Shown piece after piece: positions 3,750-24,480 of a stretch of DNA of 25,785 nucleotides (positions are counted from its first letter, which is position 1; each line of letters begins with the position of its first letter). Source of the stretch: Octopus sinensis (taxonomy: Eukaryota). The position numbers and the translations under genes are program-made. Below the pieces are notes generated by a model. That model saw nothing but the letters and a program-made list of their open reading frames with translations, had not been told where the DNA came from and ran no database searches. The stretch is taken from contig NW_021836002.1 in assembly GCF_006345805.1 (NCBI RefSeq), positions 1 to 25,785 of the forward strand. Direction: 5' to 3'.

Positions 3750-5400
3750 CAGTCGTTTCAACAGGTAGGGAACTGTCCATATGAAAAGCACAATGTTCGA
3801 AGGTTCAATCCAACAACTTTCAGCAATGACTTGTGCTTTGTTAATTTTTCATAGCGAATCTGGGTTTTAGAGGGAACTGATATTTCTGCTTAGGGTAGAG
3901 GGGTGGCAGTCTGTTGGGGTTAACGGAATGAAAAACTCTATCATTTGGCTGTGATTCATGATAATTTGGGCTTCTGGAGACCTGGAGGATGTTGGGTGTT
4001 GGAAATTCTGTTGGAAAGTGTGTAACCTGATTGAGGTCGGTCAGGGTGTCAACCGATCTGTAACAAGATTCTTGAGAAGGTAGCTGACTGAGTAAGTCAT
4101 AGTTAAGAGTGTTGACGCTGCATTTGTAGTGTAAGAACAGGCCTGACATGAAGCCAATCTGGTTTTATGTATTCCGTTGTAAGATTTGGGTAAATGGCAG
4201 AACATAAGTCATCAGGGCTGGATTCAGTGTGGCCAATGATGGTAGTGTCAATGTATCCATTGCCGTCGAACATAATTTGTCCATTGACGATTGTTAAAGA
4301 GCATTTGCAAAACCTGGGCTCTAGGCTGACCAGTCTGTGTAGGAGTGATCTCATGTTGTTGGTGAGTTGTTTCGATTGGACATGCGACCAAAGGAGGGAC
4401 TTTTTAAGGCAGGTATTAAGGTCATCAGTGGGTGTTCCCTTGGGTATAATAGGCAGAGTTTATGAAAAATCTCCTGCAAGAAGCAGAGTCACACCTCTAA
4501 GGATGTTGATTTTGATCTAAGATCCCTCATTGTGATATAAAGTGTATGTAGGGAACATTTAGGGGACTTCGTTGCTTCATCCCAAACAACGAGTTTGCAC
4601 TTCATCAAAACTGCTGATTTGTCCGAGTAATGTATTGTGTGGCACATTGGGTTCTTTGATGTGCCTCATTGAAAGGCAATTTGAAGGCAGAGTCTGCTGT
4701 GCGTCCACCGTGGAGAAGAGTCGAGGCTATTTCTGAGGAAGCACCAGCAATTGCACGGTCACCATTATGCCACAACTTGTAAGAAGAGATTCAAGAGGAA
4801 TGTTTTCCCAATTCCACCGGGTGCGTGTTACGATGGTTCCACCAGTGTGTGTGGAGATGTTTCCGAGGACGAAATTGTATACGTGAGCTTGATCGGAATT
4901 CTGAAGGGACCTGTTTTCAGCAATATAATGTCTGAGTTTGTCGATGTTGTAGGATGTTTCTCTGAGAATGAAGTGATTGGGACAGGTGCCTTCAATTCAG
5001 TTTGAATGTTGAGAGAATAAGCGTCCAGTCGTTGACCTCCAATTGTTATAACTAATTGAAAATGCCAGATCAGATTGGTGCCTGATGCAGCCTTCTGCTT
5101 GCAAGCTCTCACTCAGACTGTCCAACCCATGCCAGCCATACATACATATATATATAACATATACACTGCTAAACAAGCAGTTTTCGGCCACTGACATAAT
5201 GTTATAGGTATGTTGTAAGAGTGGTCAGTTTGGCTTACTACTCTGGCTTCAAATGCATCTGAAAAATCTGGTATTGAGTCTGTCCATCTAAGATGGTTAG
5301 ATGTAGTTCCTCTCTGGACAGATGGACAGAGATTAAAATACAAAATGATTAATAAAGCAAGTGTAGAAACAGTCAACCCCATAAATTTGACCTTAAAAAA
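3750..5400 (-). mobile_element. Decayed Helitron RepHel fragment (end of Rep region plus Pif1-family SF1B helicase)
   Basis: Minus-strand frames give Walker A APGGIGKT (4801-4824), AIAGASSEIASTLLHGGRTADSAFKLPF (~4670-4755), GVTLLLAGDF.TLPIIPKGTP (~4435-4497), IYPNLTTEYIKPDWL (~4145-4195) and QFPLKPRFAMK..KAQ..LKVVGLNLRTLCFSYGQF (~3770-3880). Many stops, frameshifts and an internal deletion. Confidence 0.9.
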
Positions 5401-6263
5401 TGGTCTAAACACTTTGACTTTCACAGGAGTCTATAGGTGGGGTATATATATATACATATATATATATATATAAACAAAATATATACAAAATAAATATGTA
5501 CAGTGATGATGATGATGATGATGATGGTATATAAATGAAGCTGAAAACACACGCACAATATGAAACTAATAAAATGATGAAGAGCCCCTTCCAATGTGGA
5601 AAGGGTCAGTTAAGTAACATTTACATATTCCCGAAATATAAAAAGATGACTTTTGCCTTCTACATCGTAAGAAGCTGTCAGTCTCCAATGACAAGGCTTC
5701 TAGCAAAACCACAAGGCTCTTCAGTACATGTGTGTGTGACTATCTATGTATAGTAAGTATGCACACACACACACACACACCACACGTCTGCATGTATAGT
5801 TTTGTATATATATATATAAATAGTTTCTCAGTGTATTTGCTTTGTCTGTCGCAATTAGTAATACTGTTTAATTATAGCAGTTGCTTAATCACTAGACTGG
5901 AGGCAGATACAATAACACACACACACACACACTAAATATATTATATATATATGTGTATGTATTATATTTATATATATATATGTAAATACGCATCTATCTA
6001 TGCACACAGAAATAATTGTATGTACATTTACATATGTGTATGTGCGTGTGTGTGTGTGTTTGCAAGTATTTATCCCTTTTTCCTGTAGTGGGAACCTAGC
6101 ACACCACACATCCATATATACGAGTACATATATATATATATATATATATATAGATATTATATAGACATATACACAATGTAGGACATGTCTAGCTTTATCA
6201 TTTGTCTACGTGATCAAATACATAACAGCTGTGTGCAAATTTCACACTACACACCCACACACA

Positions 6264-6740
6264 CGAGGCGTTAACGCCCACTTCTTCCTGCTATTTATAA
6301 ATAAGCCTCATCAGTAGGGATTATCACATTTTTGCCAGTTCTTTCAACTGAACTCACAGACAGACAGACTTCAGGCTGAAATTCAAACGCAATTATTGAC
6401 TCAAGTAAGTACTTTATGATAATTATCTTCATTAACAACTTCATAAACACATTTACAGTGTGAAATATTCCTTAAACTATTTCAAACATAATTATGCTGT
6501 TATGTTGAAAATTGTTTTATTTTCAGGCAGTATTTTTCATACTAGAAACTGTTCAAACATTTCACAGAGTTACATTATAAGCAAAACATTTCATTTCCAG
6601 AATATAATATAAAGGATAGTTGTTATGACAAGGTCAAAACTATTTGATGGAAATTAAGGAAATGGAAATGTTCATCTAAGGATACAGCATTTTAAGTTGT
6701 TTCCAGTAGATTTCTAATTCTCAAGTGAATTTAAAACTTG
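6264..6740 (+). other. Copy 1 of a duplicated module: TATA-like box, short exon, 196-nt GT-AG intron (6405-6600), second exon
   Basis: TATAAATA at 6296-6303; donor CAA|GTAAGT at 6404/6405; acceptor tttcatttccag| at 6600; alignable by eye along its length to 8101-8580. Confidence 0.55.
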
Positions 6741-6859
6741 TATGAGAGTGTGTTTGTGTATATATGTATATATATATATATATGTGTGGTGTGGTGTGTT
6801 GATAATATATGAGTGCAATATGAAGGGGTTTAATCTGTTCTAGTGCATGTGTGTTTGTT

Positions 6860-6995: not shown

Positions 6996-7149
6996 GGAGT
7001 TAAATGCAGTGTTGTTCAAATTCTTTTACTTCCTGTACCTGTTTATGTATTTTTCTGTGTTAATGTTAACAAGGAAAAATATCATTCATTTATATATATA
7101 ATATATATATAGATATAGTATATATATATATATAATATATGTGTGTGAC

Positions 7150-7345
7150 TGTCCACCTCACCATCGTTTGAGAACCAGTGTTGCTGTGTTTACCCCCTAT
7201 AACTTAGCAGTTCAGCAAAAAAGACCAATAGAAAAACTACTAAGCTTACAAAGAGTAAGTCCTCGGATCGATTTCTTCTACTAAAGGTGGTGCTCCAGCA
7301 TGACCACATTGAAAATTACTGAAACAAGTAAAGGAATAAGAGAAT
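7150..7345 (+). mobile_element. Family-A tRNA-derived SINE, 3' half only
   Basis: taacttagcagttcagcaaaaaagaccaatagaa...aaaggtggtgctccagcatgaccac...actgaaacaagtaaa matches 3' halves at 11260-11455 and 12235-12420. Confidence 0.75.
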
Positions 7346-7703
7346 ACATATACATATGTGCACACATACATATAAGTTAGTTCCTGGTAGATTATTTCCA
7401 GAGAAACCCAACCTGAGCTCTGGGCTGTTGGATTCCAGACCAATACCAAAATTCTTCAAGCATAAGAAATGCCGGTTTCACAACAGTAACACCATAGTTA
7501 TGTTACTATCATACACAAACATGTATATATATATACATACATGTGTATATATAAACATGTGAGTGTGTGTGTATGTGTATATATATACACACATATATAT
7601 ACATACGTATATAAAAATAAGCATATCTATATATATGTGTGTATTTATGAGAAGGTTGTATGTTATTTCAGGAAAATTTCTTTATTATTTCTAAGAAGAC
7701 TAT

Positions 7704-9000: not shown

Positions 9001-10580
9001 TAATACAATTTCTAATGATTCTACTAATTGAAATGTTTAAAACTGAGTTTTTATTTCAATATTAAACTTTGTATATAAATGGAATTGTTCTGGTGATTTC
9101 ATTTCTATTTTATATCTTGAAGCAAACAAGAAGAATTGTTTAAATATTAAACAATTTGGTGACAACATATTTTCTCTCTCAGCAATCTTTATCCTACATC
9201 AACATTTTAATGTGCAATGCATTAAATATGTTTTCTCACCATCTTCGATATTCTATATCAGATGGATGGCTTCTGAGAATTACTTCACATTGTCTGCAGT
9301 TATTATTCACTCTATTACAAACAAAGAGCAAAGTCCCTAAAATGCCCCTAAAAATATATTCAATCATGACAACTTATGGGAGGGTCATGGTTAGAAAGTT
9401 TTGACTATAGCATTGCTAGACAAGAATTAACTTTCAGGTAAAAATCAAAAATGGAAATCATAGTTTTAATATATTTTAAACAAATGTATTTCTTTCATTT
9501 TAGATATATTTACTGTTTATAAAAATAATTTTAATGATTCAATATTTCAACTTTATAAATTGTATTTCGGAATTATGAAAGTTAAACATCCTATTAAATT
9601 TAAAAAGATTGTATTTTTAATATATTTTTACAAATTACATTTAAAATATTGTATTTTTAATAATAATAATCTATGTTATAAATTTGTATATTTCTTTAAG
9701 TTAACCAAGAGAATGTCTAAAAATTAAAAAATTCCAAGGTAACATCAGATATACCAACGAACATGCACCTGTAAATAATGTAATTAATCATTTGTTATTA
9801 CCTGGCCAAGGTACGACCTGGTTATGTTTCTCTAATGATGCTCTCTCAAGCAATAATATATTCATAGAAATCAAACAGTTAAACAAGTGAACTTATTCAT
9901 GTAAAAAGGGTCAGTTGGCAAAGGCATTCACACATTTTACTAAAAGACTGTTTCCAGTATCTGCTCTGGTGCCCTGAGTTCAATACTAGTGAGGTCAGCT
10001 TTACTTTATATTATGATTGATAAAGAACCAGTCAAGTATGGAGTAGATTTGTCATCATTGTGTTCTTCCTCCTCTTCAACCACTTCTTTCTTTCTATGTG
10101 CAAGACATTGCCAGGGGTTACACAAGTAGAGAGAAAGGCTCCTCCAGATTTCAAATCTCTCCAAGTCATTCTATATCTTATATCATCTGGTTGACCTCTT
10201 TTGATTTTAAATACAGCCAGAGAGGTCAGATCTTCTGATGCTGTTTTTCAACTTATTTTCCATCAATGTAGACCCAGAGTTTATTTACATGCCTCTTCTT
10301 CATCCATTTCCTCCCTCTTTCATCGTTCTTCTCTTTGTTTATATTATCAAGTCTGCAACAACTGTTGTAGTTGACCCTTCCACTTTTTTCAGCCGTTTAA
10401 GGCTCTGGTCTCAAAGACACCCATCCGGTCACTGCCACTGTGCTTCTGTTGTTGTTGTTGTTGTTGTCAACACCAGCTCATTGGCCATTCCCAGCATCAG
10501 CTCTGCCACTATAAATCCGTATGGAGTCAGGATCTTTTGGTTTGTGAATCTGTGGTGTATATATATATATACACACACAC

Positions 10581-11455
10581 AGGAGTGGCTGTGTGGTAAG
10601 AAGCTTACTTCCCAACCACATAGTTCCGGGTTCAGTTCCACTGCGTGATGCTTTGAGCAAGTGTTTACTATTATAGCCTCAGGTCAACCAAAGACTTGTG
10701 AGAGGATTTGGTAGATGGAAATGAAAGAAGCCCGATATCATCATCATCATCATCATTGTTTAACGTCCGCTTTCCATGCTGTGATGGGTTGGACAATTTG
10801 AGTGAGGACTGGCGAACCAGATGGTTGCACCAGGCTCCAATCTCATCTGGCAGAGTTTCTATAGCTGGATACCCTTCCTAATGCCAACCATTCCGAGAGT
10901 GTTACTGGCTGCTTTTACGTTACACTGGCACAAGGGCAATCCAGGCGATACTGGCCACATCCACTCTCAAATGGTGCCTTTTACGTGCCACCTGTACAGG
11001 AGCCAGTCCAGTGGCACTGGCACCAACCTCGCTCGAATCATTTTTGTGTCACCAGCACAAGTGCCAATGAGGCAATGCTGGTAACGATCACGCTCAAATG
11101 GTGCTTTTCATGTGCCACCAGCATGGGAGCCAGACAGCTGCTCTGGCAATGATCACACTCGGATGGTGCTGTTAGCGCTCCACTGGCACGGGTGCCAGTC
11201 ATCGAATTTGGTTCAATTTCGATTATATATATATATATGTGTGTGTGTATATGTTTGTGTTTATGTTTGTCCCCAGCTTTGCTTGACAACCGATTTTGGT
11301 GGGTTTGCGTCCCTGTATCTTAGCGATTTGGCAAAAGAGAATGATAGAATAAGTATTGGGCAAAACAAAGAATAAGAACTGGGGTCCGTTTTATATTTGA
11401 CTACAGGCGGTGCTCCAGCATGGCTGCAGTCAATGACTGAAACAAATAAAGGAAT
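10581..11455 (+). mobile_element. Family-A SINE split by a nested family-B insertion (head 10581-10735, 3' half ~11260-11455)
   Basis: Head and 3' half are contiguous in the copy at 12077-12420 but here are separated by ~485 bp of family-B sequence. Confidence 0.8.
10737..11222 (-). mobile_element. Family-B SINE-like retroposon with (GAT)n tail and internal ~60-bp tandem units
   Basis: Starts catcatcat..gtttaacgtccgctttccatgc (reverse of the 3' tail); contains tagctggatacccttcctaatgccaacc and about five gtgcttttacgtgccacc-type units. Confidence 0.8.
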
Positions 11456-11458
11456 ACA

Positions 11459-11513
<55 letters not shown>

Positions 11514-11886: not shown

Positions 11887-12076
11887 ATGTATGTATGTAT
11901 ATATATATATATATAGATATATATATAATATATATATATTATATATATATATATTTATATGTTTATATACATATATATACATACATAACATATATATATA
12001 TTATGAGAGACAACGTAAAGGGGGAATGGTAATGTGGGAGGTGACAAGAATTAGAAGCAGTGGGGCAAGAGCACAA

Positions 12077-12420
12077 GAGTGGCTGTGTGGTAAGAAGCAT
12101 GCTTGCCAACCACATGGCTCTGGGTTCAGTCCCATTGCATGGCACATTGGGCAAATCAAAACCTTGTGAGTGGATCTGTTAGACGAAAACTGAAAGAAGC
12201 CCATCAGATATATTTATGTGTCTCTGCTTCGCCCACCAAAGAGCTTGACAACCAATATTGGTATGTTTACATCCCTGTAACTTAGCAATTTGGCTAAAGA
12301 GACCAATAGAATAAGTATTGGTCTTAGAAAGAATAAGTCCTGAGGTTGATTTGTTTCACTAAAGGCAGTGCTCCAGCATGGCCACACTCAAATGACTGAA
12401 GCAAGTACAAGAATAAAAGA
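12077..12420 (+). mobile_element. Family-A tRNA-derived SINE, full length
   Basis: gagtggctgtgtggtaag (A-box-like), gggttcagtccc (B-box-like), conserved body ending gtgctccagcatggccacactcaaatgactgaagcaagtacaagaataaaaga. Confidence 0.8.
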
Positions 12421-12437
12421 ATATATATATATATACA

Positions 12438-12764
12438 CGTCGCCTTACTGGCACTTGTACCCGGGCTAGTAGGGTGCTAAGAGCATCATCCAAGCGTGAT
12501 CGTTGCCAGAGTGGTTAACTGGCTTCCGTGTCAGTGGAACGTAAAAGACACCATTCGAGTGAGGTCGTTGCCAGTACTGCCTGACTGGCATGTAAAATGC
12601 ACCCACTACAGTCTCGGAGTGGTTGGCGTTAGAAGGGCATCCAGCTGTAGAAACTCTGCCAGATAAGATTGGAGCCTGGTGCAACCATCTGGTTTGCCAG
12701 CCCTCAGTCAAAATCGTCCAACCCATGCTAGCATGGAAGGCAGACGTAAACGATGATGATGATG
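12438..12764 (+). mobile_element. Family-B SINE-like retroposon
   Basis: ggttggcgttagaagggcatccagctgtagaaac...ccaacccatgctagcatggaaggcagacgtaaacgatgatgatgat. Confidence 0.8.
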
Positions 12765-14553: not shown

Positions 14554-15025
14554 ACATACATATGTACAGACGTATGGATGTATAAATATACATATGTGCA
14601 TCCTTGTGTATATATTATACAATTCATTCTATCATATATACATATATATGTATGTGTATCCTGAAGAAGGTCTCTTTATTTTTTCATCCTCCTGGGGTCA
14701 AGAGAGTAACAGTCATTATTTCATAGACCAAGGAGGCGGTGGAGGATCATTCTGATGATGATGGGTCACCAGAATGTCTAAACACCCCACCAATATTTCC
14801 TAATCCACCTCATTAAACCCCCAATACTTCATAATAAACTACACCAAGTTATAACTCCTCACCTAACACAAAACAAAACACACTTCACCTGCCAAACCTT
14901 TTTCATACAAACACATCTTTCTCATTGCTACCCAAACATTGTCCCTTATATTAAAGATAATTAAGATGAACCTACCTTTCATTAATTGGGCTTATTCATT
15001 AACCAATCTTTATTATCTCAATCAG

Positions 15026-15218
15026 CAACAAATAATAACGATCTCTCAACATGCTGTCTATCAGTGTGTTATATTGAAAGCATCTTTGGATAAGCTTCCG
15101 AGTTAATCAATGTTGTGTATGATAATTGTGTGGATTATATTGAAATGTCGAGAGATTTACAGCATTTGTCAGGTTTAAGAACAGTTTCATCTCCAGCTAT
15201 TCGTATCTGTGAATCCAG
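15026..15218 (+). other. Possible upstream exon of the propeller gene, followed by an 89-nt GT-AG intron (15219-15307)
   Basis: Acceptor atcag| at 15025, donor CCAG|GTAAAT at 15218/15219, acceptor gatttgtag| at 15307; mostly open reading (..NVVYDNCVDYIEMSRDLQHLSGLRTVSSPAIRICES|RDVVFHY) with one frame break. Confidence 0.3.
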
Positions 15219-15404
15219 GTAAATATGATGGAAACCAAGCCAACCATGACTGTCACATCATTTCCAGTGCATATAATTATTAATAATACTTATATCCTGA
15301 TTTGTAGGGACGTGGTATTTCATTATGCAACCATAAATTCCTGTAAAATATATTAAATCGTTTTAGAAGTCAACACACATTCTACTTTGTTAGCAGTGTT
15401 TTTC

Positions 15405-15635
15405 ACATTATTCTATTGATATTCCATAGAAATTATAGTTGGCTCTGATTTTTTGCTAAAGCTTTCCTATCGAGATGTCAGATGTAAACAAACAATGAGA
15501 TACACAATGAGAACTAAAAACAGATGTTTTTCTCTTTGATCTCATTGTGTTTCCGTCTGACATTTCGATATGAAATGTTGTAGCAGGAAATCAGTCCTGG
15601 CTATAATTTCTACGATAATATCTGTAGAAATAACC
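15405..15635. repeat. Imperfect inverted repeat (foldback/MITE-like), arms ~75-95 bp
   Basis: tagaaattatagttggctctgattttttgc..tttcctatcgagatgtcagatg..acaatgagat (15427-15501) is the imperfect reverse complement of atctcattgtgtttccgtctgacatttcgatatgaaa..gcaggaaatcagtcctggctataatttcta (15539-15612). Confidence 0.75.
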
Positions 15636-15912
15636 TCAACAAATATTATTATATTCCTTCTTACTACAAAACTTTTCACCATCACTTATATTCAGTCAAT
15701 AAAGAAATGGTGTATTTATATCTTCAAGTTTTATTTCTAATGATTATTCCATTGAAAACACTTTAAATGTTTAACTTCACTGTCAAATAAACAATTTGTT
15801 TAATATATTTAATGAAATGTGTGTTTTCCTTGAAATTCTTTGAATGAATCAAGTAAATATTATTTTATCAAAAGCTTTTCACAAAACTAATAAAGCTTTC
15901 ATTTTATTTCAG

Positions 15913-18900
15913 CTTTCACGTAAGAATTAGTGAATTTGAAGAGATAAATTGTATTCGAAGGAAGAAAACAAAATCCACAGAAAAGAATATATTAACAGAA
16001 AAAGATAATAATTCTATATTCATAAAATGGAGAAGATTAATGAAGAAGAAAACAAAATGTTGGCTCTCGTTCCTGCCACAGTCTGTGATACAACACCAAT
16101 TTATAAGGGAACTACACCAAATCTTACCCAATATTAGATACACAAACACAAAGAAAACAGAAGAACAGGAAAGAAAAGACACAAAGAAATCTAAAGAACA
16201 GGAAAAGTCCATGTACCAAGTTTTTTTTCATATTGTGACATGTTACCGAACACTAATCAAAACAGACCACATCAATACGTTTATAGATTATGTAAAGGAT
16301 AATGTAATCACATGGACTCTCTGGGTTTAATGGATCTCGAATTTTACGTAATATCAAACGTAAAATGCCAAGATTTCTGGAATTTGCAAAACAAAATAAT
16401 GATTTGTTCACCTAAACCTTGATGGTTTCAACAAAGACTCTTTGACATTTATGTCACCTGTAAACCCATACAACCACAAGACCATTGAACCACCAAAAGT
16501 AACCACAAAATTTCGTCCTCTTCGGCCAGTTGTGACCAGAGAAGTAGGATTGAGGAATCTGGTGAAGACTTAAGCAACCCAATATCCAATATTGTTGTCA
16601 TACAAGGGGGAATTGTAACATATTCCCGCCCACTTTATGACAATATGTTGGTAACAAGAGACGGCAACAGAAACGATGTTCGTGGTCATCTTCTGTCACT
16701 GATTTTACCAGAATCAGTGAAGACACAGTCCTGGCCACCCTCCCATTTCGAAAGATGATTCTTATTATCAACCCTTTAAGTTTGGGAATCAAAAGAATTC
16801 AGCTAGGATAATCTTGGTTTCTTATTTGGAAACATTCTACGCTTATAGGTGTAGAAAGTTGGTCAGACCATATACGTCATTGACTGGGAAGAGAATAGAA
16901 TAAAATACGAATATAACGAAAACAAAGACCCCTTCAGATATTGCTGTAGGAGCACAAAATAAACTCTTAGTCCTTTTCCAATATTAACAGGGGTTACCTG
17001 TTACAATGTGGATGGCCAGCAATTATTTGAGGTGGTGGATACCAATTCCCTGGACATTCAAGCCACATCTCTGTGTACCAAAACCATTTTATGTCCTTCA
17101 GGGACATATTATTTATCGGATATCAGGTACAGGTGCTGTGACAACAAGAGGAATGGCATGAAATGCCGCCATATTTGTTGGCAGAGAAAATATTTTTGTA
17201 ACTGATTATTTTGATGTCCTTCATATCATTGGAACAAATGAAGACTTTTGGCCCAGGCAGTCACATAACCTCCAGCTATGGACCCCAACATGAACAACTA
17301 TATTATATTGAGGATTGCTACAACATTACAATATTCTACCTATGTACATCTTCTATATTAATAATTTACAAAAACAAGAAAGCTAAATTATTCACTGAGA
17401 ACGGGGAAAAATTAACCAAAATAATTCAGTTTTCCTTGAGCTTCCTTCTTTCTGTTGTAGAATAAACGCAAACAGATTCCTGGTATTTTATTGTGAAATG
17501 AAAGGATTTCAGTATATCACCTGTCCTGAACTAAGAAAAGGCCCTTTAATAAAGGTGCAAACTGGTTACATGAAAATATGTCATGTTGTATCAAATAAGT
17601 GTCTGGCTGTGACCACCACTGAAAACAAAAGCGAGGTCCATATCCTATTGATCAACGAAGATAAAGTTGACATTGCAGAAAGAATTTCTCTGGGACATCA
17701 TAATGTCAGCATTGCTGCAACTCCAATTAATTTTGTAGTCGTAGATGGAAACGAAAATAAAATGGTATTGTATTCCACATGTGGTGAAGAACTTTTCAAA
17801 AATACCTTCCATTCTATGGCTACCCTCATCAAATTTACTCTGATAATATTTATTTTTATGTCCTCTTCAGGAGACACTATATTCTCAGATGTTACGATCT
17901 ATATGGACCAATGAAATGGCAGTGGGAACTGCCTTTCCCTGTTCACCCTCACATTGCTGTTTTCCAAGGAACTCTTTATGTCCCGGACACTCAACTCAAC
18001 AGGGTTCTTCTTTACAAGTATCAAGACTGGTCGTCTGGCTGTCGTTTACCCACAAAAAATCCTTACATCAGAAATCTAAATCTACGACTCAAAGAAAAGG
18101 AGAATGACCAAAAACTTGTAATTGGCGAAATATGTAATCTGGCCAATGGACAGTTGGTGGTGTCTGACATCAAGCATGATTGCATGTTGTACATTTCTGA
18201 GGAAGGAGACATTGTGTCCAGATTATCTCTGCCATCTACAGCCACAGATATATGTCGATGGGATTCTAATCATATAGGGGTCACATTACCCCTACAGAAA
18301 CAATTAAGGGTCATCGGAAACCTATCAAAGACAGTGAGAAGTGTATCACTAAGGCAGCCTTATGTACGGGTGTGTAAGATGGGTGAAGGTGAAATTGTTT
18401 GTTATTGTGATAAACCATCACATTTAGACATTTTAGCCATCAATTATTATAATCAAGTCGAAGTAATTAAGACAATTAATATCCCTGTGTTTGTGAAATC
18501 ATTATCAATAGACAAGAAAACAGAAAGCTATTAATTGTTACTAGGGGAAAAGCTTTCATCGTACAACACTAGAATAGGTGGTGGTGGTCATGGCGGTCGT
18601 CAGATGGTCCCCAGTGTTTTAATGTCCCAAGTGAAACGTCCCCTCAGTCTCCAAGGTGGATCTATTGACCAAACGTCTGTTTATCTGATAGACAGAAGCC
18701 GTATGTTTGCCATAAACGATCAGATTTGTTGGTTAATGATCTCGTTACTAATAATCAACTTAATTATTATATCGACCTGGTGGATGTATTTTCCAGACAC
18801 ATTTCTCTCAGTGAAATGTTGTCTTCCACTTTATATCTACAGGACCTGACAGTTTCTGATAAAGCCAGACATATTCCTCTCCCTAAACATTTGGGAGACA

Positions 18901-21240
18901 AAGAACCAGCGAGGATTAATCGTTTGGTTCTTACTGAAAATAATCTGATTGCAGGATGTGACGAGGAGAATGGAAACATTAAGATATTCACATTGGATGG
19001 TCAGCTTTTGGATTCAATCAAAGTGAATGTTTATTATAATATTAAAATGTGTCGATGGCAGTCAAACACACTGGTCATTACGAATGGGGATCTTTCTAAT
19101 AATAAATACCAACTGTGGACATTAAAAGTGGAATTTCCATTGTCGTTGGTAATTTACCAAACGAGAAATATTATTAATGTGTGGCTTCTTTATCAAATAT
19201 CAACTGGTTTTAGTGAATCGAGAGATGGAAGACATTTGCATTTTGTTGATATTGATGAAATACATTCGAGTGTGAAGGAAATAAAAAAATAGACATACCT
19301 GAACCATTAATAGAGAGAGACGAAGATGGAATTATTCTGATATAATCCAGGATATTAAAGTTACTGATGAAGATGTCATCATTGTCTTCAACTGGAGATT
19401 CATCATTTTCTTCAACAGTGGTGGTCAATATTTACATTCAGTCAGACACTACATGGAGATTATTTGGTGTGATGACAGATGACAATTGATGACAGTTTTT
19501 TGTACATTTATGGTGAGTGGGAGAAATGTTTTGGTTCATCTGGATATCGAAACATTTTGTGTTTGACCCAGAATGGGGAATACAAGAGAATATTTTTAAA
19601 TAAAAGAATTTATAAAGATGAAGTATATTTCTCCAGTATAGACTGTAAAGGACCAAGGTTTGTTGGAAGCCCCTGGAGGAATGAATTGTATGTTGAAGGG
19701 TTGTTTATGGTGAATCGAGACAGCTTCCCGGTTGCTCGTTTACAAACAGACGAATGTCCTGTTCAAGTAAAAGATTTTGATGTCTCTGAGGAAGGAAAGA
19801 CAGTTGTGTGTGAAAAAGCCAATAATGGAAATGTTAAAATATTCGATGAAGACGGCCAGTTGCTACGTCACAGAAATGTTGCAAGTTTAGTTGGTGGTGT
19901 GTGTTTTACACAAGAATCACACATAATGGCCACGGTTCCTAAAAGGAAAGAAATATTTCAACTGAATGGAGAAGATTTGCAGACATCTCAAGTTTGGTCG
20001 AGTCTCATCCCTTATGGTGTAATATGGAGAAAAGTGGCGGGTATTTACTGGTGTGTACATAATGAATTGATTGAATGTCATTGCATAAAGATTGATGGGG
20101 ACCAAGTGAACATTCTGGAATCTGTGTCGTCATTAATCTTGATTCTGGTCTTCGTTTCCCTTCCATTACATCTGAAACGAACAAGGAATATTCAGTAATG
20201 AATTAATTAATAAATTGGAATACAGAGGAGGAGATGGAGATGGAGGAGAAGAAGAAGAGGTAAATCAGGTGAAATAATTGGTAAGGTAGATTAAAGGTGA
20301 GATGTGGTAATTACATAGCGGAGATTAATAATTCAGGAATTGATGAAATATCAGTGAGGAGACTTCCATATAGGACAGCAATGGTCCCTTTTTCCATTCC
20401 TGCATTCGAGGAACCTGTTGATTATGATTGAGGACATTAGGGACCGGAACAGTAAACTAATTAAGTTAGATGAGAATGTGAGTGTGTTGATGTTTCGAGA
20501 AAGTGTCACATTAATCAGAACAACAACAACACAACAGTGGACATACTTCAACATGAACAACAACACGAACACCACTGGACATATGTCGGTGGACAGAGGA
20601 ATGTTTCATTGTCGCCTTTGGGGAGAGAATGAGGGTCTTCAACAGGGATCTCCGTCGTTTAAAAACCATCAGAACTGAGAAATACTACAACAGGATTTAT
20701 AAATACAACGACAATCAACTCGTGTGTGGTGGTCATTATATTAGAGACGTAACTCAAGAAGAGAGAGACAAGAAATACGATAGAATATGGATGAACAACA
20801 AGGATTACTATTTTTGCAAAGACCTTGACATCTTTGACCCTTATTATGTGGATGTGGTTGATTTTGAAGATGGGAAATGTAAAGATGAAGTGTGTCGTGG
20901 GGAGATGAGATGGGGAAGGATGGAGGGAGAAGAAGGGGTGTTGGATGGTGTGGGAGTCACATCTTTTGGTGATGTTGTTGTTTTGAGGAGGGAGATGGAG
21001 AAGTCTGGAGGGTGGGAACTTTTTTGTTTTGTGGAATGGTTCAGGGAAAAGTCTTTGGTGAGGAGGATAAGAATAGAAGAAAGTTTTTTATGGTCTGGAT
21101 ATTATATCCAAGACCTCGTCTGACCATAATTGGTGAATGTGTTTATATAACAGATTTAAGAAACAATATTTACGAAATACCTGGACATATTGAAGAGGAA
21201 CATCTGAAGATGATGAAATCCGGGATTAAAAGATAATCCA
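15913..21240 (+). pseudogene. Large apparently single-exon gene for a protein with about six tandem NHL-like beta-propeller domains; frameshifted in this sequence (pseudogene or assembly indels)
   Basis: Overlapping ORFs 17498-17914, 17911-18534, 18726-19292, 19479-20198, 20629-21123, 21012-21236 chain into one coherent beta-rich protein with NHL-like motifs (PSDIAVGAQNKLLV, VTCYNVDGQQL, GTLYVPDTQLNRV, GEICNLANGQLVVSD, ATDICRWDSNHIGVTLP, NGNIKIFTLDGQLL, NGNVKIFDEDGQLL, CVYITDLRNN). Splice acceptor ttttatttcag| at 15912. Confidence 0.7.
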
Positions 21241-21432
21241 AAATATTTACTCCTCAGAGGGGATGATAATGAAGTCTTGAAGTTCTTGGTTTGGATGTTT
21301 CAGACAATTCTTTGATGGTTTTTGGAATTATTCCTGGACGTCAATCTTTTGCTTTCTTTATTTTGACAAATAAATATTTCCAGAAATATTAAACTTCAAT
21401 CTTCTTCTTCTTATTGTTGTTGTTGTTGTAAA

Positions 21433-21492
21433 TGGCTTCGCCCGGAATCGAACCTGCATCGCATACATTGCATTCTACACACTACACTTATT
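21433..21492 (-). other. tRNA-like relic or SINE head
   Basis: Reverse strand: taagtgtagtgtgtagaatg..gcaGGTTCGATTCCgggcgaagcca has a clear B-box/T-loop, but the T-stem is mismatched and no anticodon arm can be built. Confidence 0.3.
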
Positions 21493-21753
21493 GTTGTAAC
21501 ATTCCTCAACACTCTCTCTTTGTGTGTGTGTGTATATTTATATACAGTATATGTACATGTGTTTATATATATACACACATATTTAGGAATGTATGTATAG
21601 AAATAAGGCTATAAGTATGTATGTTTGTGTGTGTATATACGCATAATATATATGTATTATATATATATATAACGCATGCATGTATGTATAGGAATGTCTG
21701 GTCCGAAAGCAGAGACTTTCATAATCATTGATTCTCCATTAAAAGGCAGACGA

Positions 21754-22093
21754 CCACCGCCGCCGTCTCCGTCGTCGTCGTGGTCGTGGTCGTCGTCGTC
21801 TCCGCCGTCGTCGTCGTCATCGTCGCCCGCGTCGTCGTGGTCGTGGTCGTCGTTTCCGCCGTCGTCGTCGTGGTCGTCGTCGTCGTCTCCGCCGTCGTCG
21901 TCTCCGCCCGTGGTCGTCGTCATCATCATCATCATCATCGTCGTCATCATCATCATCATCATCGTCGTCTTCATCGTCGTCATCATCATCATCATCGTCA
22001 TCACCATCATCGTCATCATCGCCATCATCATCGTCATCACCATCATCGTCATCATCGCCATCATCATCGTCATCATCATCATCGTCGTCATCA
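21754..22093. repeat. Compound trinucleotide repeat (GTC/GCC/GTG grading into ATC)
   Basis: Directly visible; includes an exact 36-bp duplication (21991-22026 = 22027-22062). Confidence 0.95.
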
Positions 22094-22253
22094 GCGTTGT
22101 GTGTGCGTGTGTGCATTTGCATCTGACAGTTTTTACGTTTAAAAGAATAGATTGTTTTGTTGTTGTTGTTGCAGTGACATTCCAACTGCACACACGCACA
22201 AACATTGCCTTTCGTCCTCGTAGGGTTGTTGTTGTTGTTGTTGCTGTTGGGGT

Positions 22254-22603
22254 TCATAAAAAAGAGAAGGACACTTTAAGAAGCATTCAGTAAAAGCTTT
22301 CCCATAGCTGGTCATTTTTCACGCTAGAAATAGAAACCACTTTATTTTTCATATAATTTTGAAGGACAGATAAGAAGCATTCATAAATAAATTGACCTGT
22401 ATATGGTCTCATTTCATGCTAGAAAGAGCCACAAAACCTTCACATTTTTGTTTCATCACAAATAAAATCGATGGACAATTTCCAAAGCATCCATGTCAAA
22501 TATTGTCCTATAGATGGCCTAACATCATGCTAGAAATAACAGCCAAATACTCTGAAATTTGTATCGTTTGTCATAAAAAAAGTGAAGGACACTTTAAGAA
22601 GCA
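22254..22603. repeat. Pair of ~32-bp direct repeats
   Basis: tcataaaaaagagaaggacactttaagaagca (22254-22285) and tcataaaaaaagtgaaggacactttaagaagca (22571-22603). Confidence 0.8.
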
Positions 22604-23069
22604 ACTCTAAAAATATTGTCCTGCGGCGGTTTAAGTGTAAAATATTATAAAAGTATGCATCTATGAGTTTATGTGTTTAAAAAACATAGCAAAGACCTGT
22701 TGTATATGTAGGTATATACATGTGTATAAAGTATTTTTTTGTAAAAAAGGTATTTTTGAATGAAATTTGGTAGAAATAACTTTCAAACGATGCAGATTAC
22801 GATTAAAAAGAATTTTTTGGCAAAATGTTTTTGTAAGGTTCGAGGGAAAAAGTGTGTGATTTAAGGGAGATTGGCTGTTGTTTCTAGCACACCACCCTCC
22901 TTGTCTTCTTTTTTTTCTCATTTTTTCCCTCAGAAACACATTTATGTTAAAAAAATAAAAAAGATATTTTTAAAATCTCTGATTATTTTTAGCCCCACTT
23001 CCTGGCCCCCGATTCTTTCTCTTATATAATTGTAAAATATTGGAGAGCCTGAGAAGATTCTTGCTGAAT

Positions 23070-23225
23070 TTATCCACAGGGATTTAAATAAGAGCTTTGT
23101 AAAAGAGGATTTCTTTTGAGAGCATCCTTTTCTGTTAGAACGAAAGTGGAAGTTTCATTAAAAATATCCATTTCCTGGAAGTTATGAGGAACACAGTCGA
23201 TGGGGTGTTCATCTGTAGTTATGCC

Positions 23226-23258
<33 letters not shown>

Positions 23259-23558
23259 ACTGTAATAAATGTAGTGTGTATATATATTATATATGTATGT
23301 GTGTTTGTGTATACATATTATTCATGTATATGTACAAGTTTAAAAAAGAAATATCAAAAGATGTTGGAATATTTGAGGTATTGGATAATTTCCGACTCAG
23401 GATTGCCAATACATTTATTAGGAATATAAATATACATCTTATTATACGTAGCCTTCTTGCACACACATAAGCATACCTCGTAGAGAAGATGACGGGTAAA
23501 TCCATCTGTGACAACCCATGCTTAAGGGTGTCTGGTGATATTTCGGGTCTGGTATCAT
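23070..23558 (-). CDS. Candidate two-exon small gene (exon 1 23558-23477, exon 2 23212-23070), 74 aa, unknown product
   Basis: Donor GAG|GTATGC at 23477/23476, acceptor ataactacag| at 23213/23212, microsatellite-filled 264-nt intron; phase-1 join gives MIPDPKYHQTPLSMGCHRWIYPSSSLRDEHPIDCVPHNFQEMDIFNETSTFVLTEKDALKRNPLLQSSYLNPCG*. Confidence 0.45.
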
Positions 23559-23621
23559 ACAAACCGCCCAGTCTGGAGTCTCTATAAACTTCTGCCGCTT
23601 CCCGTTCAATTGTTTCTATCT

Positions 23622-23634
23622 GTTGCCTAGCAAC
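23622..23634. promoter_or_regulatory. RFX X-box
   Basis: GTTGCCTAGCAAC, the 13-bp palindromic RFX-binding consensus, ~65 bp upstream of the candidate ATG. Confidence 0.6.
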
Positions 23635-23666
23635 GCTAATTTGAATGACAAAAACGTGGAGAAAAA

Positions 23667-23675
23667 GGCGGGAAA
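23667..23675 (-). promoter_or_regulatory. E2F-binding site
   Basis: GGCGGGAAA (TTTCCCGCC on the minus strand) in a locally CpG-containing island within AT-rich DNA. Confidence 0.45.
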
Positions 23676-24129
23676 TTTAGACAAACTTTGTCTAAATTAT
23701 TTATTTAAATCAAAGAGACATTGTCAGCATTTTTATGAATTAATAATGTTAAATGATTAAGGTCTCACAATTAAGTCATTAATTAGGAATTATAATTAAT
23801 TTGGACGTGAAAAAGAAAGGAAAAACTACGGATGTGTGTATATGTATGTATTTATGTATGTACATAAGCAGGTAAATATTTATATATTAAGTGTGTATGA
23901 ATATTTACATACGTCTATAGAGAGAGAAAGGGGGAGAGAGAGGGTGGAGTATTACACATGTATACGCATAAGACGAATGATGTCTGGGGTGTTTGTCGGT
24001 GTGTCTGTGTGTGTTATACACGCCTGTTTATGTTTTGTGCTGGTGTGTGTATTATTGGTGATGTTGTGTGTGTGTGTTTGTGTGTGTATCCGGGAACGTC
24101 ACTTTCTGCCTCTCTGTCTATATCTGCTG

Positions 24130-24178
<49 letters not shown>

Positions 24179-24182
24179 ATAT

Positions 24183-24480
24183 ATGTCTGTTGACTCTCTC
24201 CCCTATCTATCTAGCCACCTCTCTCTCTATCTGTATATCTTTTTATGTATATATCTATTTATGTATATATAAATATATAGATAATATATATATATCGTTT
24301 TGACTCTCTCCCCTATCTATCTAGCCACCTCTCTCTCTATCTGTATATCTTTTTATGTATATATCTATTTATGTATATATATAAATATATATATTATTAT
24401 ATATATGTCTGTTGACTCTCTCCCCTATATCTAGCCATCTCTCTCTTCTATCTGTCTATCTTTTTATGTATATCTCTCTA
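24183..24480. repeat. Three tandem ~111-bp units in the Penelope 3' tail region
   Basis: gttgactctctcccctatctatctagccacctctctctctatctgtatatctttttatg recurs at ~24189, ~24300 and ~24411. Confidence 0.9.

What the first reader, a model, noticed from the sequence alone, without database searches (positions are those of the whole stretch)
15913..21240. Giant single-exon gene with about six tandem NHL-like beta-propellers
A diagnostic 'K-I/L-F-x-x-x-G-x-x-L' strand recurs with ~800-bp period: NMLVTRDG (~16645), KLFTENGEKL (~17380), MLYISEEGDIV (~18185), KIFTLDGQLL (~18980), KIFDEDGQLL (~19835), RVFNRDLRRL (~20630). About 270-285 aa per period matches one six-bladed NHL propeller, implying a ~1,750-aa protein with six divergent propellers after a charged, coiled-coil-like N-terminus. 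Canonical TRIM-NHL proteins (TRIM2/3/71, Brat) carry a single propeller, and molluscs are known to have expanded TRIM/NHL-like families. A string of highly diverged propellers in one exon suggests a multivalent ligand- or RNA-binding receptor, possibly immune. The function is inference only.
Basis: partly seen in the sequence, partly recalled or inferred. Interest (0 to 1): 0.75.

Follow-up and report, generated by a model that had tools for sequence, protein, structure and literature searches.

The report
Octopus giant six-propeller NHL-like gene
The window holds one copy of an undescribed, octopus-specific, much-duplicated gene whose single 5.3-kb coding exon encodes a short N-terminal region followed by six NHL-type beta-propellers; the roughly 45 frame breaks in this copy look like sequencing errors, not gene death.

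Summary
All six motif strings sit at the stated coordinates. They mark six homologous units of about 260-290 aa (profile-profile E 1e-6 to 1e-7).

The region (CDS 16027-21373, + strand) belongs to a family of about 1,660-1,925-aa "uncharacterized" proteins. The family was found only in Octopus vulgaris, O. sinensis, O. bimaculoides and Argonauta hians. Intact members are uninterrupted ORFs of 5.35-5.4 kb, and dozens lie on one 29-Mb O. vulgaris chromosome.

AlphaFold2 predicts six-bladed, four-stranded propellers with good confidence for units 1-4 and 6. Unit 5 is poorly predicted. The unit-4 profile hits only NHL domains in the PDB (Thin 3e-5, Brat 6e-5, TRIM2/3/71). It also matches the propeller of a cuttlefish RING-B-box-NHL TRIM protein (E 3.5e-12). 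No octopod member tested has a RING or B-box, a signal peptide or a TM helix, and none passes Pfam NHL.

The window copy needs about 40 frameshifts. These are mostly 1-nt deletions, and they occur at the same density in the non-coding flanks. They are absent between two reference loci, and no nonsense substitution exists. They are therefore probably assembly errors.

Function is inferred only: a cytosolic multivalent binding scaffold, possibly for RNA or immune recognition. This is a new architecture of a known fold.

The parts
3989..4080 (+). Probable upstream 5' exon (UTR or alternative coding start), followed by a GT donor at 4081
   Evidence: Residues 2-31 of gene model P0052 match window 3991-4080 at 80%. 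The sequence reads AG|gtagct at 4080/4081. This is inferred from a paralogue's gene model and is not shown for this locus.
15913..16026 (+). Start of the main exon (5' leader), directly after the splice acceptor cattttatttcag at 15900-15912
   Evidence: Sequence read. The DNA is colinear with the upstream region of the paralogue locus L002.
16027..21373 (+). Whole coding region of the hexa-propeller gene, from ATG at 16027 to TAA at 21371-21373. In the window sequence it is broken by about 40 frame-shifting small indels.
   Evidence: A frameshift-aware alignment to P0050 gives 1,754 aligned residues, 92% identity, about 40 frameshifts and no stop in the corrected frame. The DNA is 94.4% identical to L002 over 7.5 kb.
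16027..16566 (+). N-terminal region (~180 aa): K/E/T-rich, disordered start, then helices. It is poorly conserved and unrelated to the propeller units.
   Evidence: AF2 gives residues 1-79 at pLDDT below 50 and helices 63-145 at pLDDT 53-60. Identity among relatives is 16-48%. hhalign finds no match to the units or to the cuttlefish TRIM protein.
16567..17336 (+). Propeller unit 1 (contains NMLVTRDG)
   Evidence: AF2 domain 185-412 of P0035 has pLDDT 80-88 and 23-24 strands, i.e. 6 blades. U1-U2 hhalign gives E 2e-6 over 178 columns.
17337..18114 (+). Propeller unit 2 (contains KLFTENGEKL)
   Evidence: AF2 domain 427-670 has pLDDT 75-89 and about 23 strands. hhalign gives U2-U4 E 1.7e-7 and U2-U3 E 4e-7.
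18115..18893 (+). Propeller unit 3 (contains MLYISEEGDIV and the ICRW...VTLP blade)
   Evidence: AF2 domain 701-905 has pLDDT 70-83. hhalign against the cuttlefish NHL propeller gives E 8e-6.
18894..19745 (+). Propeller unit 4 (contains KIFTLDGQLL); the unit with the clearest NHL signal
   Evidence: AF2 domain 181-463 of P0009 has pLDDT 70-94 and 24 strands, i.e. 6 blades of 4. Its PDB profile hits are Thin 3.1e-5, Brat 6.4e-5 and TRIM2/3/71. hhalign to the cuttlefish TRIM-NHL gives E 3.5e-12.
19746..20428 (+). Unit 5 (contains KIFDEDGQLL), followed by a Gly/Arg-rich linker. Its fold is not confidently predicted.
   Evidence: hhalign gives U4-U5 E 1.8e-6 and U5 against the cuttlefish NHL propeller E 4e-5. 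AF2 pLDDT is below 50 across most of it.
20430..21371 (+). Propeller unit 6 (contains ICRW...RVFNRDLRRL) and the C-terminal tail
   Evidence: AF2 domain 690-1028 of P0009 has pLDDT 70-93 and about 25 strands. hhalign gives U4-U6 E 8.5e-7 and U3-U6 E 9e-7, offset by one blade.

Best explanation
Window 16027-21373 (+) is one copy of an octopod-restricted, tandemly amplified gene family. Its product has a ~180-aa charged, partly helical N-terminal region followed by six tandem six-bladed beta-propellers of the NHL type. The whole protein is encoded in one ~5.35-kb coding exon.

The propeller unit is homologous to the C-terminal propeller of cephalopod RING-B-box-coiled-coil-NHL (TRIM-NHL) proteins. 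The family most likely arose when such a propeller lost the E3-ligase module and was duplicated six times within the gene. This happened before Octopus and Argonauta split.

The protein has no signal peptide and no membrane helix, so it should be cytosolic. Inferred mechanism (not shown): it works as a multivalent binding platform. Each propeller would offer a top-surface ligand site, as in Brat, TRIM71 (RNA) or TRIM32 (protein). The amplified, fast-evolving, mosaic copies would give a diversified recognition repertoire, possibly for RNA regulation or innate immunity.

The ~40 frame breaks in the window copy are most likely single-base deletion errors of the source assembly, so the gene is probably intact in the animal.

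Confidence by part: family membership and six-unit architecture about 0.9; NHL-type fold about 0.8; frameshifts technical about 0.85-0.9; binding-scaffold function about 0.4; immune role about 0.15-0.2.
For: Family and architecture:
- 49 + 59 protein hits, all Octopus.
- An exhaustive HMMER scan of 1.84 billion representatives gave only 32 hits. The strong ones that were looked up or already named are all Octopus, plus Argonauta hians.
- The six-unit layout is conserved down to 30% identity.
- Intact members are uninterrupted ORFs.
- The window is 92% identical in protein to P0050 across 1,754 residues.

Repeats and fold:
- The units form a homology network at E 1e-6 to 1e-7.
- AF2 predicts five confident all-beta domains of about 24 strands each.
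- Foldseek's top matches are arrays of propellers: LRP4 at 3.5e-21, LRP2, DDB1, IFT-A.

NHL type:
- 12 of 13 PDB hits of the unit-4 profile are NHL domains, the best at 3.1e-5.
- The cuttlefish protein P0102 passes Pfam RING, B-box and NHL, and hits TRIM2/3 NHL structures at 2e-11.
- P0102 matches the family at E 3.7e-6 library-wide and at 3.5e-12 by hhalign.

Cytosolic: hydrophilic N-termini and maximum KD19 of 1.8 or less.

Selection:
- dN/dS is 0.57 between two intact members and 0.30-0.73 per unit.
- Divergence between paralogues is mosaic.

Frameshifts are technical:
- 37 of the 59 ORF indels are 1-nt deletions and none is longer than 24 nt.
- The same excess appears in non-coding flanks: 41 against 5 versus L002, and 30 against 4 versus L003/L004.
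- Two reference loci differ by 381 substitutions but only 9 indels, and show 0 indels in 663 nt of flank.
- None of the 185 substitutions is a nonsense change, where 5% would be expected to make a stop.
Against: - No octopod member tested reaches the Pfam NHL gathering score; the best is P0089 at 18.5 bits against a cut-off of 20.
- The whole-protein profile hits TRIM-NHL structures only at E 0.4-1.4.
- Weak library hits also include bacterial WD40 proteins.
- Unit 5 is not confidently folded, and both models have a mean pLDDT of only 61-65.
- No single-domain structural comparison could be run, so the NHL assignment rests on sequence profiles plus blade count.
- dN/dS between the window and P0050 is 0.89, which is also compatible with relaxed constraint.
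- The source assembly is unknown and no reads were available, so real pseudogenisation is not excluded.
- Nothing here bears on ligand, expression or function.
Confidence: 0.7

Rival explanations
1. The window copy is a true unprocessed pseudogene. It would be a duplicated family member that has decayed through many small deletions and is no longer translated.
For: About 40 frame-shifting indels are present, and no ORF exceeds 248 aa. dN/dS against the closest intact copy is 0.89. The family has many fragmentary gene models, and at least one O. sinensis model (P0044) ends in a shifted frame.
Against: The same excess of 1-nt deletions is seen in non-coding flanks against three independent reference loci, where natural indels should be symmetric (41:5 and 30:4). 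Two reference loci that are twice as divergent show almost no indels. None of the 185 substitutions makes a stop, although 5% of random substitutions would. No deletion is longer than 9 nt, unlike natural decay.
Confidence: 0.12
2. The repeated units are WD40-type or another non-NHL class of beta-propeller, and the NHL resemblance is only a shared blade motif.
For: The exhaustive search gave weak multi-stretch hits to bacterial WD40 proteins at E 1e-5 to 7e-4. Foldseek returns many tandem WD40 proteins. Pfam gives faint WD40 or other beta-propeller hits and no NHL pass.
Against: The unit-4 profile finds 12 NHL domains and only one WD40 protein (RACK1, at E 0.9) in the PDB. There is strong alignment over 211 columns to a propeller that itself passes Pfam NHL. 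The predicted units have about 24 strands, i.e. six blades, not seven. The best Foldseek hit for the N-terminal half is LRP4, whose propellers are six-bladed to my knowledge; the blade number of LRP4 was not checked here.
Confidence: 0.08
3. The ORF belongs to a mobile or selfish element, and its copy number reflects transposition rather than host gene amplification.
For: The gene is intronless and long, with dozens of copies. Some gene models are fused to DUF4371 (PF14291; I take this to be transposase-related, from memory, not checked here) or to C2H2 zinc fingers (P0067, P0053). Interspersed repeats surround the gene.
Against: No transposase, RT or integrase domain lies in the ORF. No LTR or TIR flanks it. 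Homology between loci extends more than 10 kb beyond the ORF, as in segmental duplication. Divergent subfamilies are kept as near-identical-length proteins, one member listed per species in O. vulgaris, O. sinensis and O. bimaculoides. Purifying selection acts on units 1-2, with omega 0.3-0.4.
Confidence: 0.03

Closest known systems
TRIM-NHL proteins (TRIM2, TRIM3, TRIM71/LIN-41, Brat, Thin/TRIM32, Mei-P26), and specifically a cuttlefish RING-B-box-CC-NHL protein (Acanthosepion pharaonis CAE1315789.1 = P0102)
   Same: The propeller unit is homologous. hhalign of unit 4 against P0102 gives E 3.5e-12 over 211 columns. PDB profile hits go to the Thin, Brat and TRIM2/3/71 NHL domains. The units have about 270 aa and six blades of four strands. 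Both are cytosolic.
   Different: The octopod proteins tested have no RING or B-box and no demonstrable TRIM coiled coil. They carry six propellers in tandem instead of one. They fall below the Pfam NHL threshold. The family is restricted to octopods and amplified to dozens of copies.
LDL-receptor-family arrays of propellers (LRP4, LRP2/megalin, LRP5/6); these are YWTD propellers and six-bladed to my knowledge, not checked here
   Same: These are the best structural matches to the N-terminal three-propeller model: LRP4 8s9p_B at E 3.5e-21, then several LRP2 entries. The overall plan is the same, a string of propellers in one chain acting as a multivalent ligand platform.
   Different: LRP propellers are extracellular, separated by EGF modules, and belong to membrane receptors with signal peptides (from general knowledge). 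No EGF or Ldl_recept_b domain, signal peptide or TM helix is found here. The sequence signal is NHL, not YWTD.
Multi-propeller WD40 scaffolds (DDB1, SF3B3, IFT-A subunits, UTP proteins)
   Same: They are cytosolic or nuclear scaffolds built from two or three tandem propellers, and they rank high in Foldseek for both models.
   Different: To my knowledge these have seven-bladed WD40 propellers, often interdigitated. There is no significant sequence relationship, and here there are six consecutive six-bladed units.

Membership tests
NHL-repeat six-bladed beta-propeller (Pfam PF01436, six-bladed propeller clan) | Pfam NHL model at or above the gathering score (20 bits) | tested here: not met
   The window pieces give no hit. 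P0001, P0006, P0007, P0016, P0018, P0050, P0086 and P0087 give no hit. P0089 scores 18.5 bits, below the cut-off of 20.
NHL-repeat six-bladed beta-propeller (Pfam PF01436, six-bladed propeller clan) | Significant profile similarity to experimentally solved NHL domains | tested here: met
   The unit-4 profile gives Thin 3.1e-5, Brat 6.4e-5, TRIM3 0.002, TRIM2 0.003 and TRIM71 0.0085; 12 of 13 hits are NHL. The whole-protein profile reaches only E 0.4-1.4.
NHL-repeat six-bladed beta-propeller (Pfam PF01436, six-bladed propeller clan) | Six blades of four antiparallel strands in about 270 aa | tested here: met
   AF2 DSSP gives U1 23-24 strands, U2 about 23, U4 24 and U6 about 25, at pLDDT 70-94. 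U3 is cut short by the end of the query. U5 is inconclusive.
NHL-repeat six-bladed beta-propeller (Pfam PF01436, six-bladed propeller clan) | Homology to a propeller that is itself a certified NHL domain | tested here: met
   P0102 passes Pfam NHL at 29.1 bits and hits TRIM2/3 NHL structures at 2e-11. Against P0102, unit 4 gives E 1.4e-10 to 3.5e-12, unit 3 gives 8e-6, unit 6 gives 2.6e-5 and unit 5 gives 4e-5. Units 1 and 2 reach only about 8e-3 directly, but are linked through unit-to-unit matches.
TRIM-NHL (RBCC-NHL) E3 ligases | N-terminal RING finger | tested here: not met
   No RING family was found in any octopod member scanned.
TRIM-NHL (RBCC-NHL) E3 ligases | B-box zinc finger(s) | tested here: not met
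   No B-box hit.
TRIM-NHL (RBCC-NHL) E3 ligases | Coiled-coil region before the C-terminal domain | tested here: inconclusive
   AF2 predicts helices at 63-145, but only at pLDDT 53-60. The N-terminal profile has no similarity to the cuttlefish TRIM protein (hhalign E 0.12).
TRIM-NHL (RBCC-NHL) E3 ligases | A single C-terminal NHL propeller | tested here: not met
   There are six tandem units.
WD40 repeat propellers | Pfam WD40 repeats and seven blades | tested here: not met
   Only faint sub-threshold WD40-family hits appear. The units have about 24 strands. Bacterial WD40 proteins match only a single blade motif, at E 1e-5 to 7e-4.
LDLR-class YWTD propeller arrays | Ldl_recept_b repeats with intervening EGF modules, a signal peptide and a TM anchor | tested here: not met
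   No such Pfam hits. No hydrophobic N-terminus or TM segment. The resemblance is of fold and architecture only.
Unprocessed pseudogene | Disabling lesions that are real and specific to the coding region (nonsense substitutions, indels absent from neighbouring DNA at a comparable rate) | tested here: not met
   There are 0 nonsense substitutions among 185. Small deletions are as dense in the flanks as in the ORF. The reference-to-reference control shows almost no indels. Reads were not available, so this is indirect.

The most novel reading that the evidence does not exclude
Octopods evolved a lineage-specific intracellular recognition repertoire. A TRIM-NHL propeller lost its ubiquitin-ligase module and was multiplied sixfold within one exon. 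The resulting gene was then amplified to dozens of mosaic, fast-evolving copies, with hypervariable N-terminus, unit 4 and unit 6. Together these would act as diversified multivalent sensors or restriction factors for viral or transposon RNA or protein. This would be a cephalopod counterpart of the TRIM5/TRIM22 or NLR expansions of vertebrates.
Probability: 0.15. Interest if true: 0.8.

Novelty: new variant of a known kind. Interest (0 to 1): 0.55.

Why it matters
The fold is known, but the architecture is not. I know of no described protein with six consecutive NHL-type propellers, no accessory domain recognised by Pfam, and a single coding exon. The database entries are all "uncharacterized" or "hypothetical", and four full-text searches found no paper on them.

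The family is restricted to octopods. Dozens of its gene models lie on one O. vulgaris chromosome, spread over at least 9.6-22.7 Mb, with three copies within 43 kb at one site. It evolves quickly and in a mosaic fashion. These are the hallmarks of lineage-specific recognition or conflict genes. It is therefore a concrete candidate for cephalopod-specific innate immunity or RNA regulation, an area where little is known.

The family also shows how a TRIM-NHL propeller can be freed from its ligase and multiplied.

There is a practical point as well. The window sequence carries roughly 0.7-1% single-base deletions. Any "pseudogene" call from this assembly needs read-level checking.

Tried and rejected
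- Pfam on ten window ORF pieces gave nothing.
- Pfam on intact relatives gave only faint beta-propeller hints.
- The whole-family profile against the PDB gave TRIM-NHL on top, but not significantly (E 0.4-1.4). The unit-4 profile was needed to reach significance.
- Foldseek on the multi-domain models returns multi-propeller proteins of several classes and cannot by itself separate NHL from WD40. No third structure job was available for a single unit.
- Looking up the 239-aa window ORF to identify the source contig found nothing on record.
- P0039, which lies on a 26.2-kb O. sinensis contig, was tested as the possible source of the window. It is not identical.
- The third homologue search, using the cuttlefish propeller, gave only two weak hits and no octopus TRIM-NHL.
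- Literature searches for the LOC identifiers, for octopus plus NHL, and for mollusc TRIM-NHL expansions found nothing specific. The statement that molluscs have expanded TRIM families therefore rests on my own knowledge and was not verified here.
- The transposable-element reading was rejected: there are no LTRs or TIRs and no mobile-element domains.
- Pfam on ten other ORFs of at least 100 aa elsewhere in the window gave nothing.

Full report
**What is in the window**

The region has no long ORF. On the + strand, 15.9-21.4 kb breaks into stop-to-stop pieces of at most 248 aa in all three frames. Pfam finds nothing in these pieces.

A search with four concatenated pieces returned 49 proteins. 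All are from Octopus vulgaris, O. sinensis or O. bimaculoides, and all are named "uncharacterized" or "hypothetical". A profile search added full-length members of 1,780-1,800 aa.

TBLASTN shows that the window is colinear with these proteins from an ATG at 16027 to about 21386, but the match hops between frames. A frameshift-aware alignment to the closest member (P0050, 1,798 aa) gave 1,754 aligned residues at 92% identity. It needed about 40 frameshifts and met no stop codon in the corrected frame.

**Check of the observation**

All six motif strings are present at the stated places, three in frame 1 and three in frame 3. A loose regular expression for the motif hits nowhere else in the window's six frames.

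I cut the family into an N-terminal region plus six units (P0050 residues 181-440, 441-700, 701-960, 961-1250, 1251-1480/1530 and 1481/1531-1798) and compared their profiles.

| Unit pair | hhalign E-value |
|---|---|
| U1-U2 | 2e-6 |
| U2-U3 | 4e-7 |
| U2-U4 | 1.7e-7 |
| U3-U4 | 1.2e-6 |
| U3-U6 | 9e-7 |
| U4-U5 | 1.8e-6 |
| U4-U6 | 8.5e-7 |

These alignments are mostly in register over 100-180 columns. A less diverse alignment had already shown the same pattern. The N-terminal 180 aa are unrelated to the units. The ~800-bp periodicity is therefore a real sixfold internal repeat.

**Gene structure and family**

Intact members are single uninterrupted ORFs:

| Member | Species and record | ORF length |
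|---|---|---|
| P0058 | O. bimaculoides CM046629.1 | 5,352 bp |
| P0050 | O. vulgaris OX597841.1 | 5,397 bp |
| P0051 | O. vulgaris OX597841.1 | 5,406 bp |

Some members have additional 5' exons. P0055 spans 22.9 kb. The window has a probable upstream exon at 3989-4080, with a GT donor, that matches the N-terminus of model P0052.

About 46 distinct gene models lie on the 29.19-Mb O. vulgaris chromosome. Copies sit at 9.57, 21.9 and 22.66 Mb, and three copies fall within 43 kb at one site.

An exhaustive HMMER scan of 1.84 billion representative proteins with a 910-position C-terminal profile found only 32 hits. Those looked up or already named include:
- two further subfamilies, each with one near-identical-length member listed per Octopus species (P0086 type, 45% identical; P0089 type, 30% identical);
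- two proteins of Argonauta hians (1,913 and 1,925 aa).

All of these keep the six-unit layout. The architecture therefore predates the Octopus-Argonauta split. Apart from Argonauta, no six-propeller relative outside Octopus turned up in what the databases hold.

**Fold**

AlphaFold2 was run on the C-terminal 1,028 aa (P0009, 40-sequence alignment) and the N-terminal 978 aa (P0035, 45 sequences).

| Region | Model residues | pLDDT | Strands |
|---|---|---|---|
| N-terminus | 1-79 | below 50 (disordered) | none |
| N-terminal helices | 63-145 | 53-60 | helical |
| U1 | 185-412 | 80-88 | 23-24 |
| U2 | 427-670 | 75-89 | about 23 |
| U3 | 701-905 | 70-83 | truncated by query end |
| U4 | 181-463 | 70-94 | 24 (six blades of four) |
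| U5 | 464-685 | below 50 | partial only |
| U6 | 690-1028 | 70-93 | about 25 |

Foldseek against the PDB returns proteins built from several propellers. For the N-terminal half these are LRP4 (E 3.5e-21), LRP2/megalin, IFT-A and UTP proteins. For the C-terminal half they are DDB1, IFT-A and SF3B3.

**NHL or not**

Several lines point to the NHL type:
- The whole-family profile puts TRIM2, TRIM3 and TRIM71 NHL domains on top of the PDB list, but without significance (E 0.4-1.4).
- A profile of unit 4 alone, from eight octopod sequences, is significant and specific. It hits Thin at 3.1e-5, Brat at 6.4e-5, TRIM3 at 0.002, TRIM2 at 0.003 and TRIM71 at 0.0085. Twelve of the 13 hits are NHL domains.
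- The weakest informative hit of the exhaustive scan is a 656-aa protein of the cuttlefish Acanthosepion pharaonis (E 3.7e-6 for the whole library). It passes Pfam RING, B-box and NHL. It also hits TRIM28/2/3 RBCC regions and TRIM2/3 NHL structures at 1e-14 to 2e-11.
- Unit 4 aligns to the cuttlefish propeller over 211 columns at E 3.5e-12. Units 3, 6 and 5 align at 8e-6 to 4e-5.

Against formal membership, no octopod protein tested reaches Pfam's NHL cut-off; the best is 18.5 bits against 20. A few bacterial WD40 proteins also match the blade motif weakly.

I conclude that the units are divergent NHL-type six-bladed propellers, derived from the propeller of a cephalopod TRIM-NHL-like protein. 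The RING, B-box and recognisable coiled coil are absent.

**Are the frameshifts real?**

The closest locus (L002, P0050) matches window 14658-22093 at 94.4%. Colinear patches run from about 8.2 kb to the end of the window.

Inside the ORF there are 185 mismatches and 59 indels. Thirty-seven of the indels are 1-nt deletions in the window, against six 1-nt insertions, and none exceeds 24 nt.

The same asymmetry holds in non-coding flanks, where natural indels should be symmetric between two loci:
- 41 one-base deletions against 5 insertions, compared with L002;
- 30 against 4, compared with two other O. vulgaris loci.

As a control, two reference loci (L002 and L004) differ by 381 substitutions in the ORF but only 9 indels. 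They show 15 substitutions and no indel in 663 nt of upstream DNA.

No substitution in the window creates a stop codon, although 5.0% of random substitutions in this ORF would.

The small deletions are therefore a property of the window sequence itself. Most likely they are residual errors of a long-read assembly, and the gene is probably intact in the animal. Without reads this remains an inference, at about 85-90% confidence.

**Evolutionary signals**

- dN/dS between two intact members is 0.57 overall. By region it is 0.30 and 0.40 for units 1-2, 0.55-0.68 for units 3-6, and 0.73 for the N-terminus.
- Paralogues are mosaic. P0050 and P0055 are 90-96% identical in units 1, 2, 3 and 5, but only 60-64% in units 4 and 6 and 33% in the N-terminus.
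- Between the window and P0050, dN exceeds dS in the C-terminal half, but this rests on few sites.
- There are no LTRs or TIRs around the gene. Duplication blocks extend well beyond the ORF, which argues for segmental duplication rather than transposition.

**How it most likely works**

Shown: a cytosolic protein (no signal peptide or TM helix) made of a variable N-terminal region and six NHL-type propellers. It is encoded by a single coding exon and belongs to an amplified, octopod-restricted family under moderate purifying selection.

Inferred: each propeller offers a ligand-binding face. In TRIM-NHL proteins this face binds RNA (Brat, TRIM71) or proteins (established knowledge of that family). 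Six in a row would give a multivalent platform without ligase activity. Amplification and modular hypervariability suggest a diversified recognition role, possibly in RNA regulation or innate immunity. None of this was tested.

**Comparison and novelty**

The closest family by descent is TRIM-NHL. The closest by architecture are the LRP propeller arrays and the multi-WD40 scaffolds. The octopod family fails the defining features of each: it has no RBCC, no EGF modules or membrane anchor, and no seven-bladed WD40 propellers. It is a new architectural variant of a known fold, present in databases only as uncharacterised predictions. Full-text searches found no paper on it.

**Verdict**

One correction applies: the copy as given is frame-broken, and most likely for technical reasons.

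Noticed in passing
whole window, measured at 5792-6742, 14658-16026 and 21400-24295: Relative to three loci of the O. vulgaris chromosome assembly, the window carries a strong excess of 1-2-nt deletions in non-coding DNA, at about 0.7-1.3% of positions. Two reference loci compared with each other show almost none. The window sequence probably comes from an error-rich long-read assembly, so any frameshift seen in it is suspect.
   Followed up: yes
window 3989-4080 and 15900-15913: A probable upstream 5' exon, matching residues 2-31 of gene model P0052 and followed by a GT donor at 4081. It lies 11.8 kb upstream of a strong splice acceptor at 15912/15913. The gene is therefore 'single coding exon' rather than strictly single-exon.
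   Followed up: partly
window 21748-22120: A long imperfect trinucleotide array (GTC/GCC, then ATC/GTC) about 400 nt downstream of the stop codon. It produces poly-D, poly-M/T, poly-I/V and poly-H/R ORFs of 120-205 aa on both strands. A similar but longer array sits at the same place in paralogue locus L002 (about 15850-16900).
   Followed up: partly
window 10578-10660 and 12072-12154; also 7100-7400, 11220-11510, 12070-12435: Interspersed repeat copies at 82-85% identity, with a tRNA-like core (...GGTTCAGTTCCAC...). They also occur in both orientations near the paralogue loci L001-L004 and are probably a SINE family.
   Followed up: no
window 10797-10877 and 12632-12712: An 81-nt inverted repeat, 93% complementary, with arms 1.75 kb apart and lying upstream of the gene. 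It may be the ends of a small DNA element.
   Followed up: no
relatives P0050 vs P0055 (O. vulgaris OX597841.1); window 18894-21371 vs L002: Divergence between paralogues is mosaic. Units 1, 2, 3 and 5 are 90-96% identical, units 4 and 6 only 60-64%, and the N-terminus 33%. In the window versus P0050, dN exceeds dS in the C-terminal half (omega about 2, few sites). This suggests gene conversion and/or diversifying selection on particular propellers.
   Followed up: partly
relatives P0053 (2,053 aa) and P0067 (2,120 aa), O. vulgaris OX597841.1: Two gene models fuse the hexa-propeller protein to C2H2 zinc fingers or to a DUF4371 (PF14291) domain. These are probably annotation run-ons into neighbouring genes or transposon remnants.
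   Followed up: no
locus L003 (OX597841.1 21.89-21.93 Mb): Three family copies lie within 43 kb, two of them in opposite orientations. The 411-aa model on the minus strand is a fragment of one copy. This illustrates the dense, partly fragmentary annotation of the cluster.
   Followed up: partly
window 1-1030: The most GC-rich part of the window (GC 0.49 against about 0.36 elsewhere), with overlapping ORFs of 191 aa (-) and 123 aa (+). Neither has a Pfam match, and its nature is unknown.
   Followed up: partly
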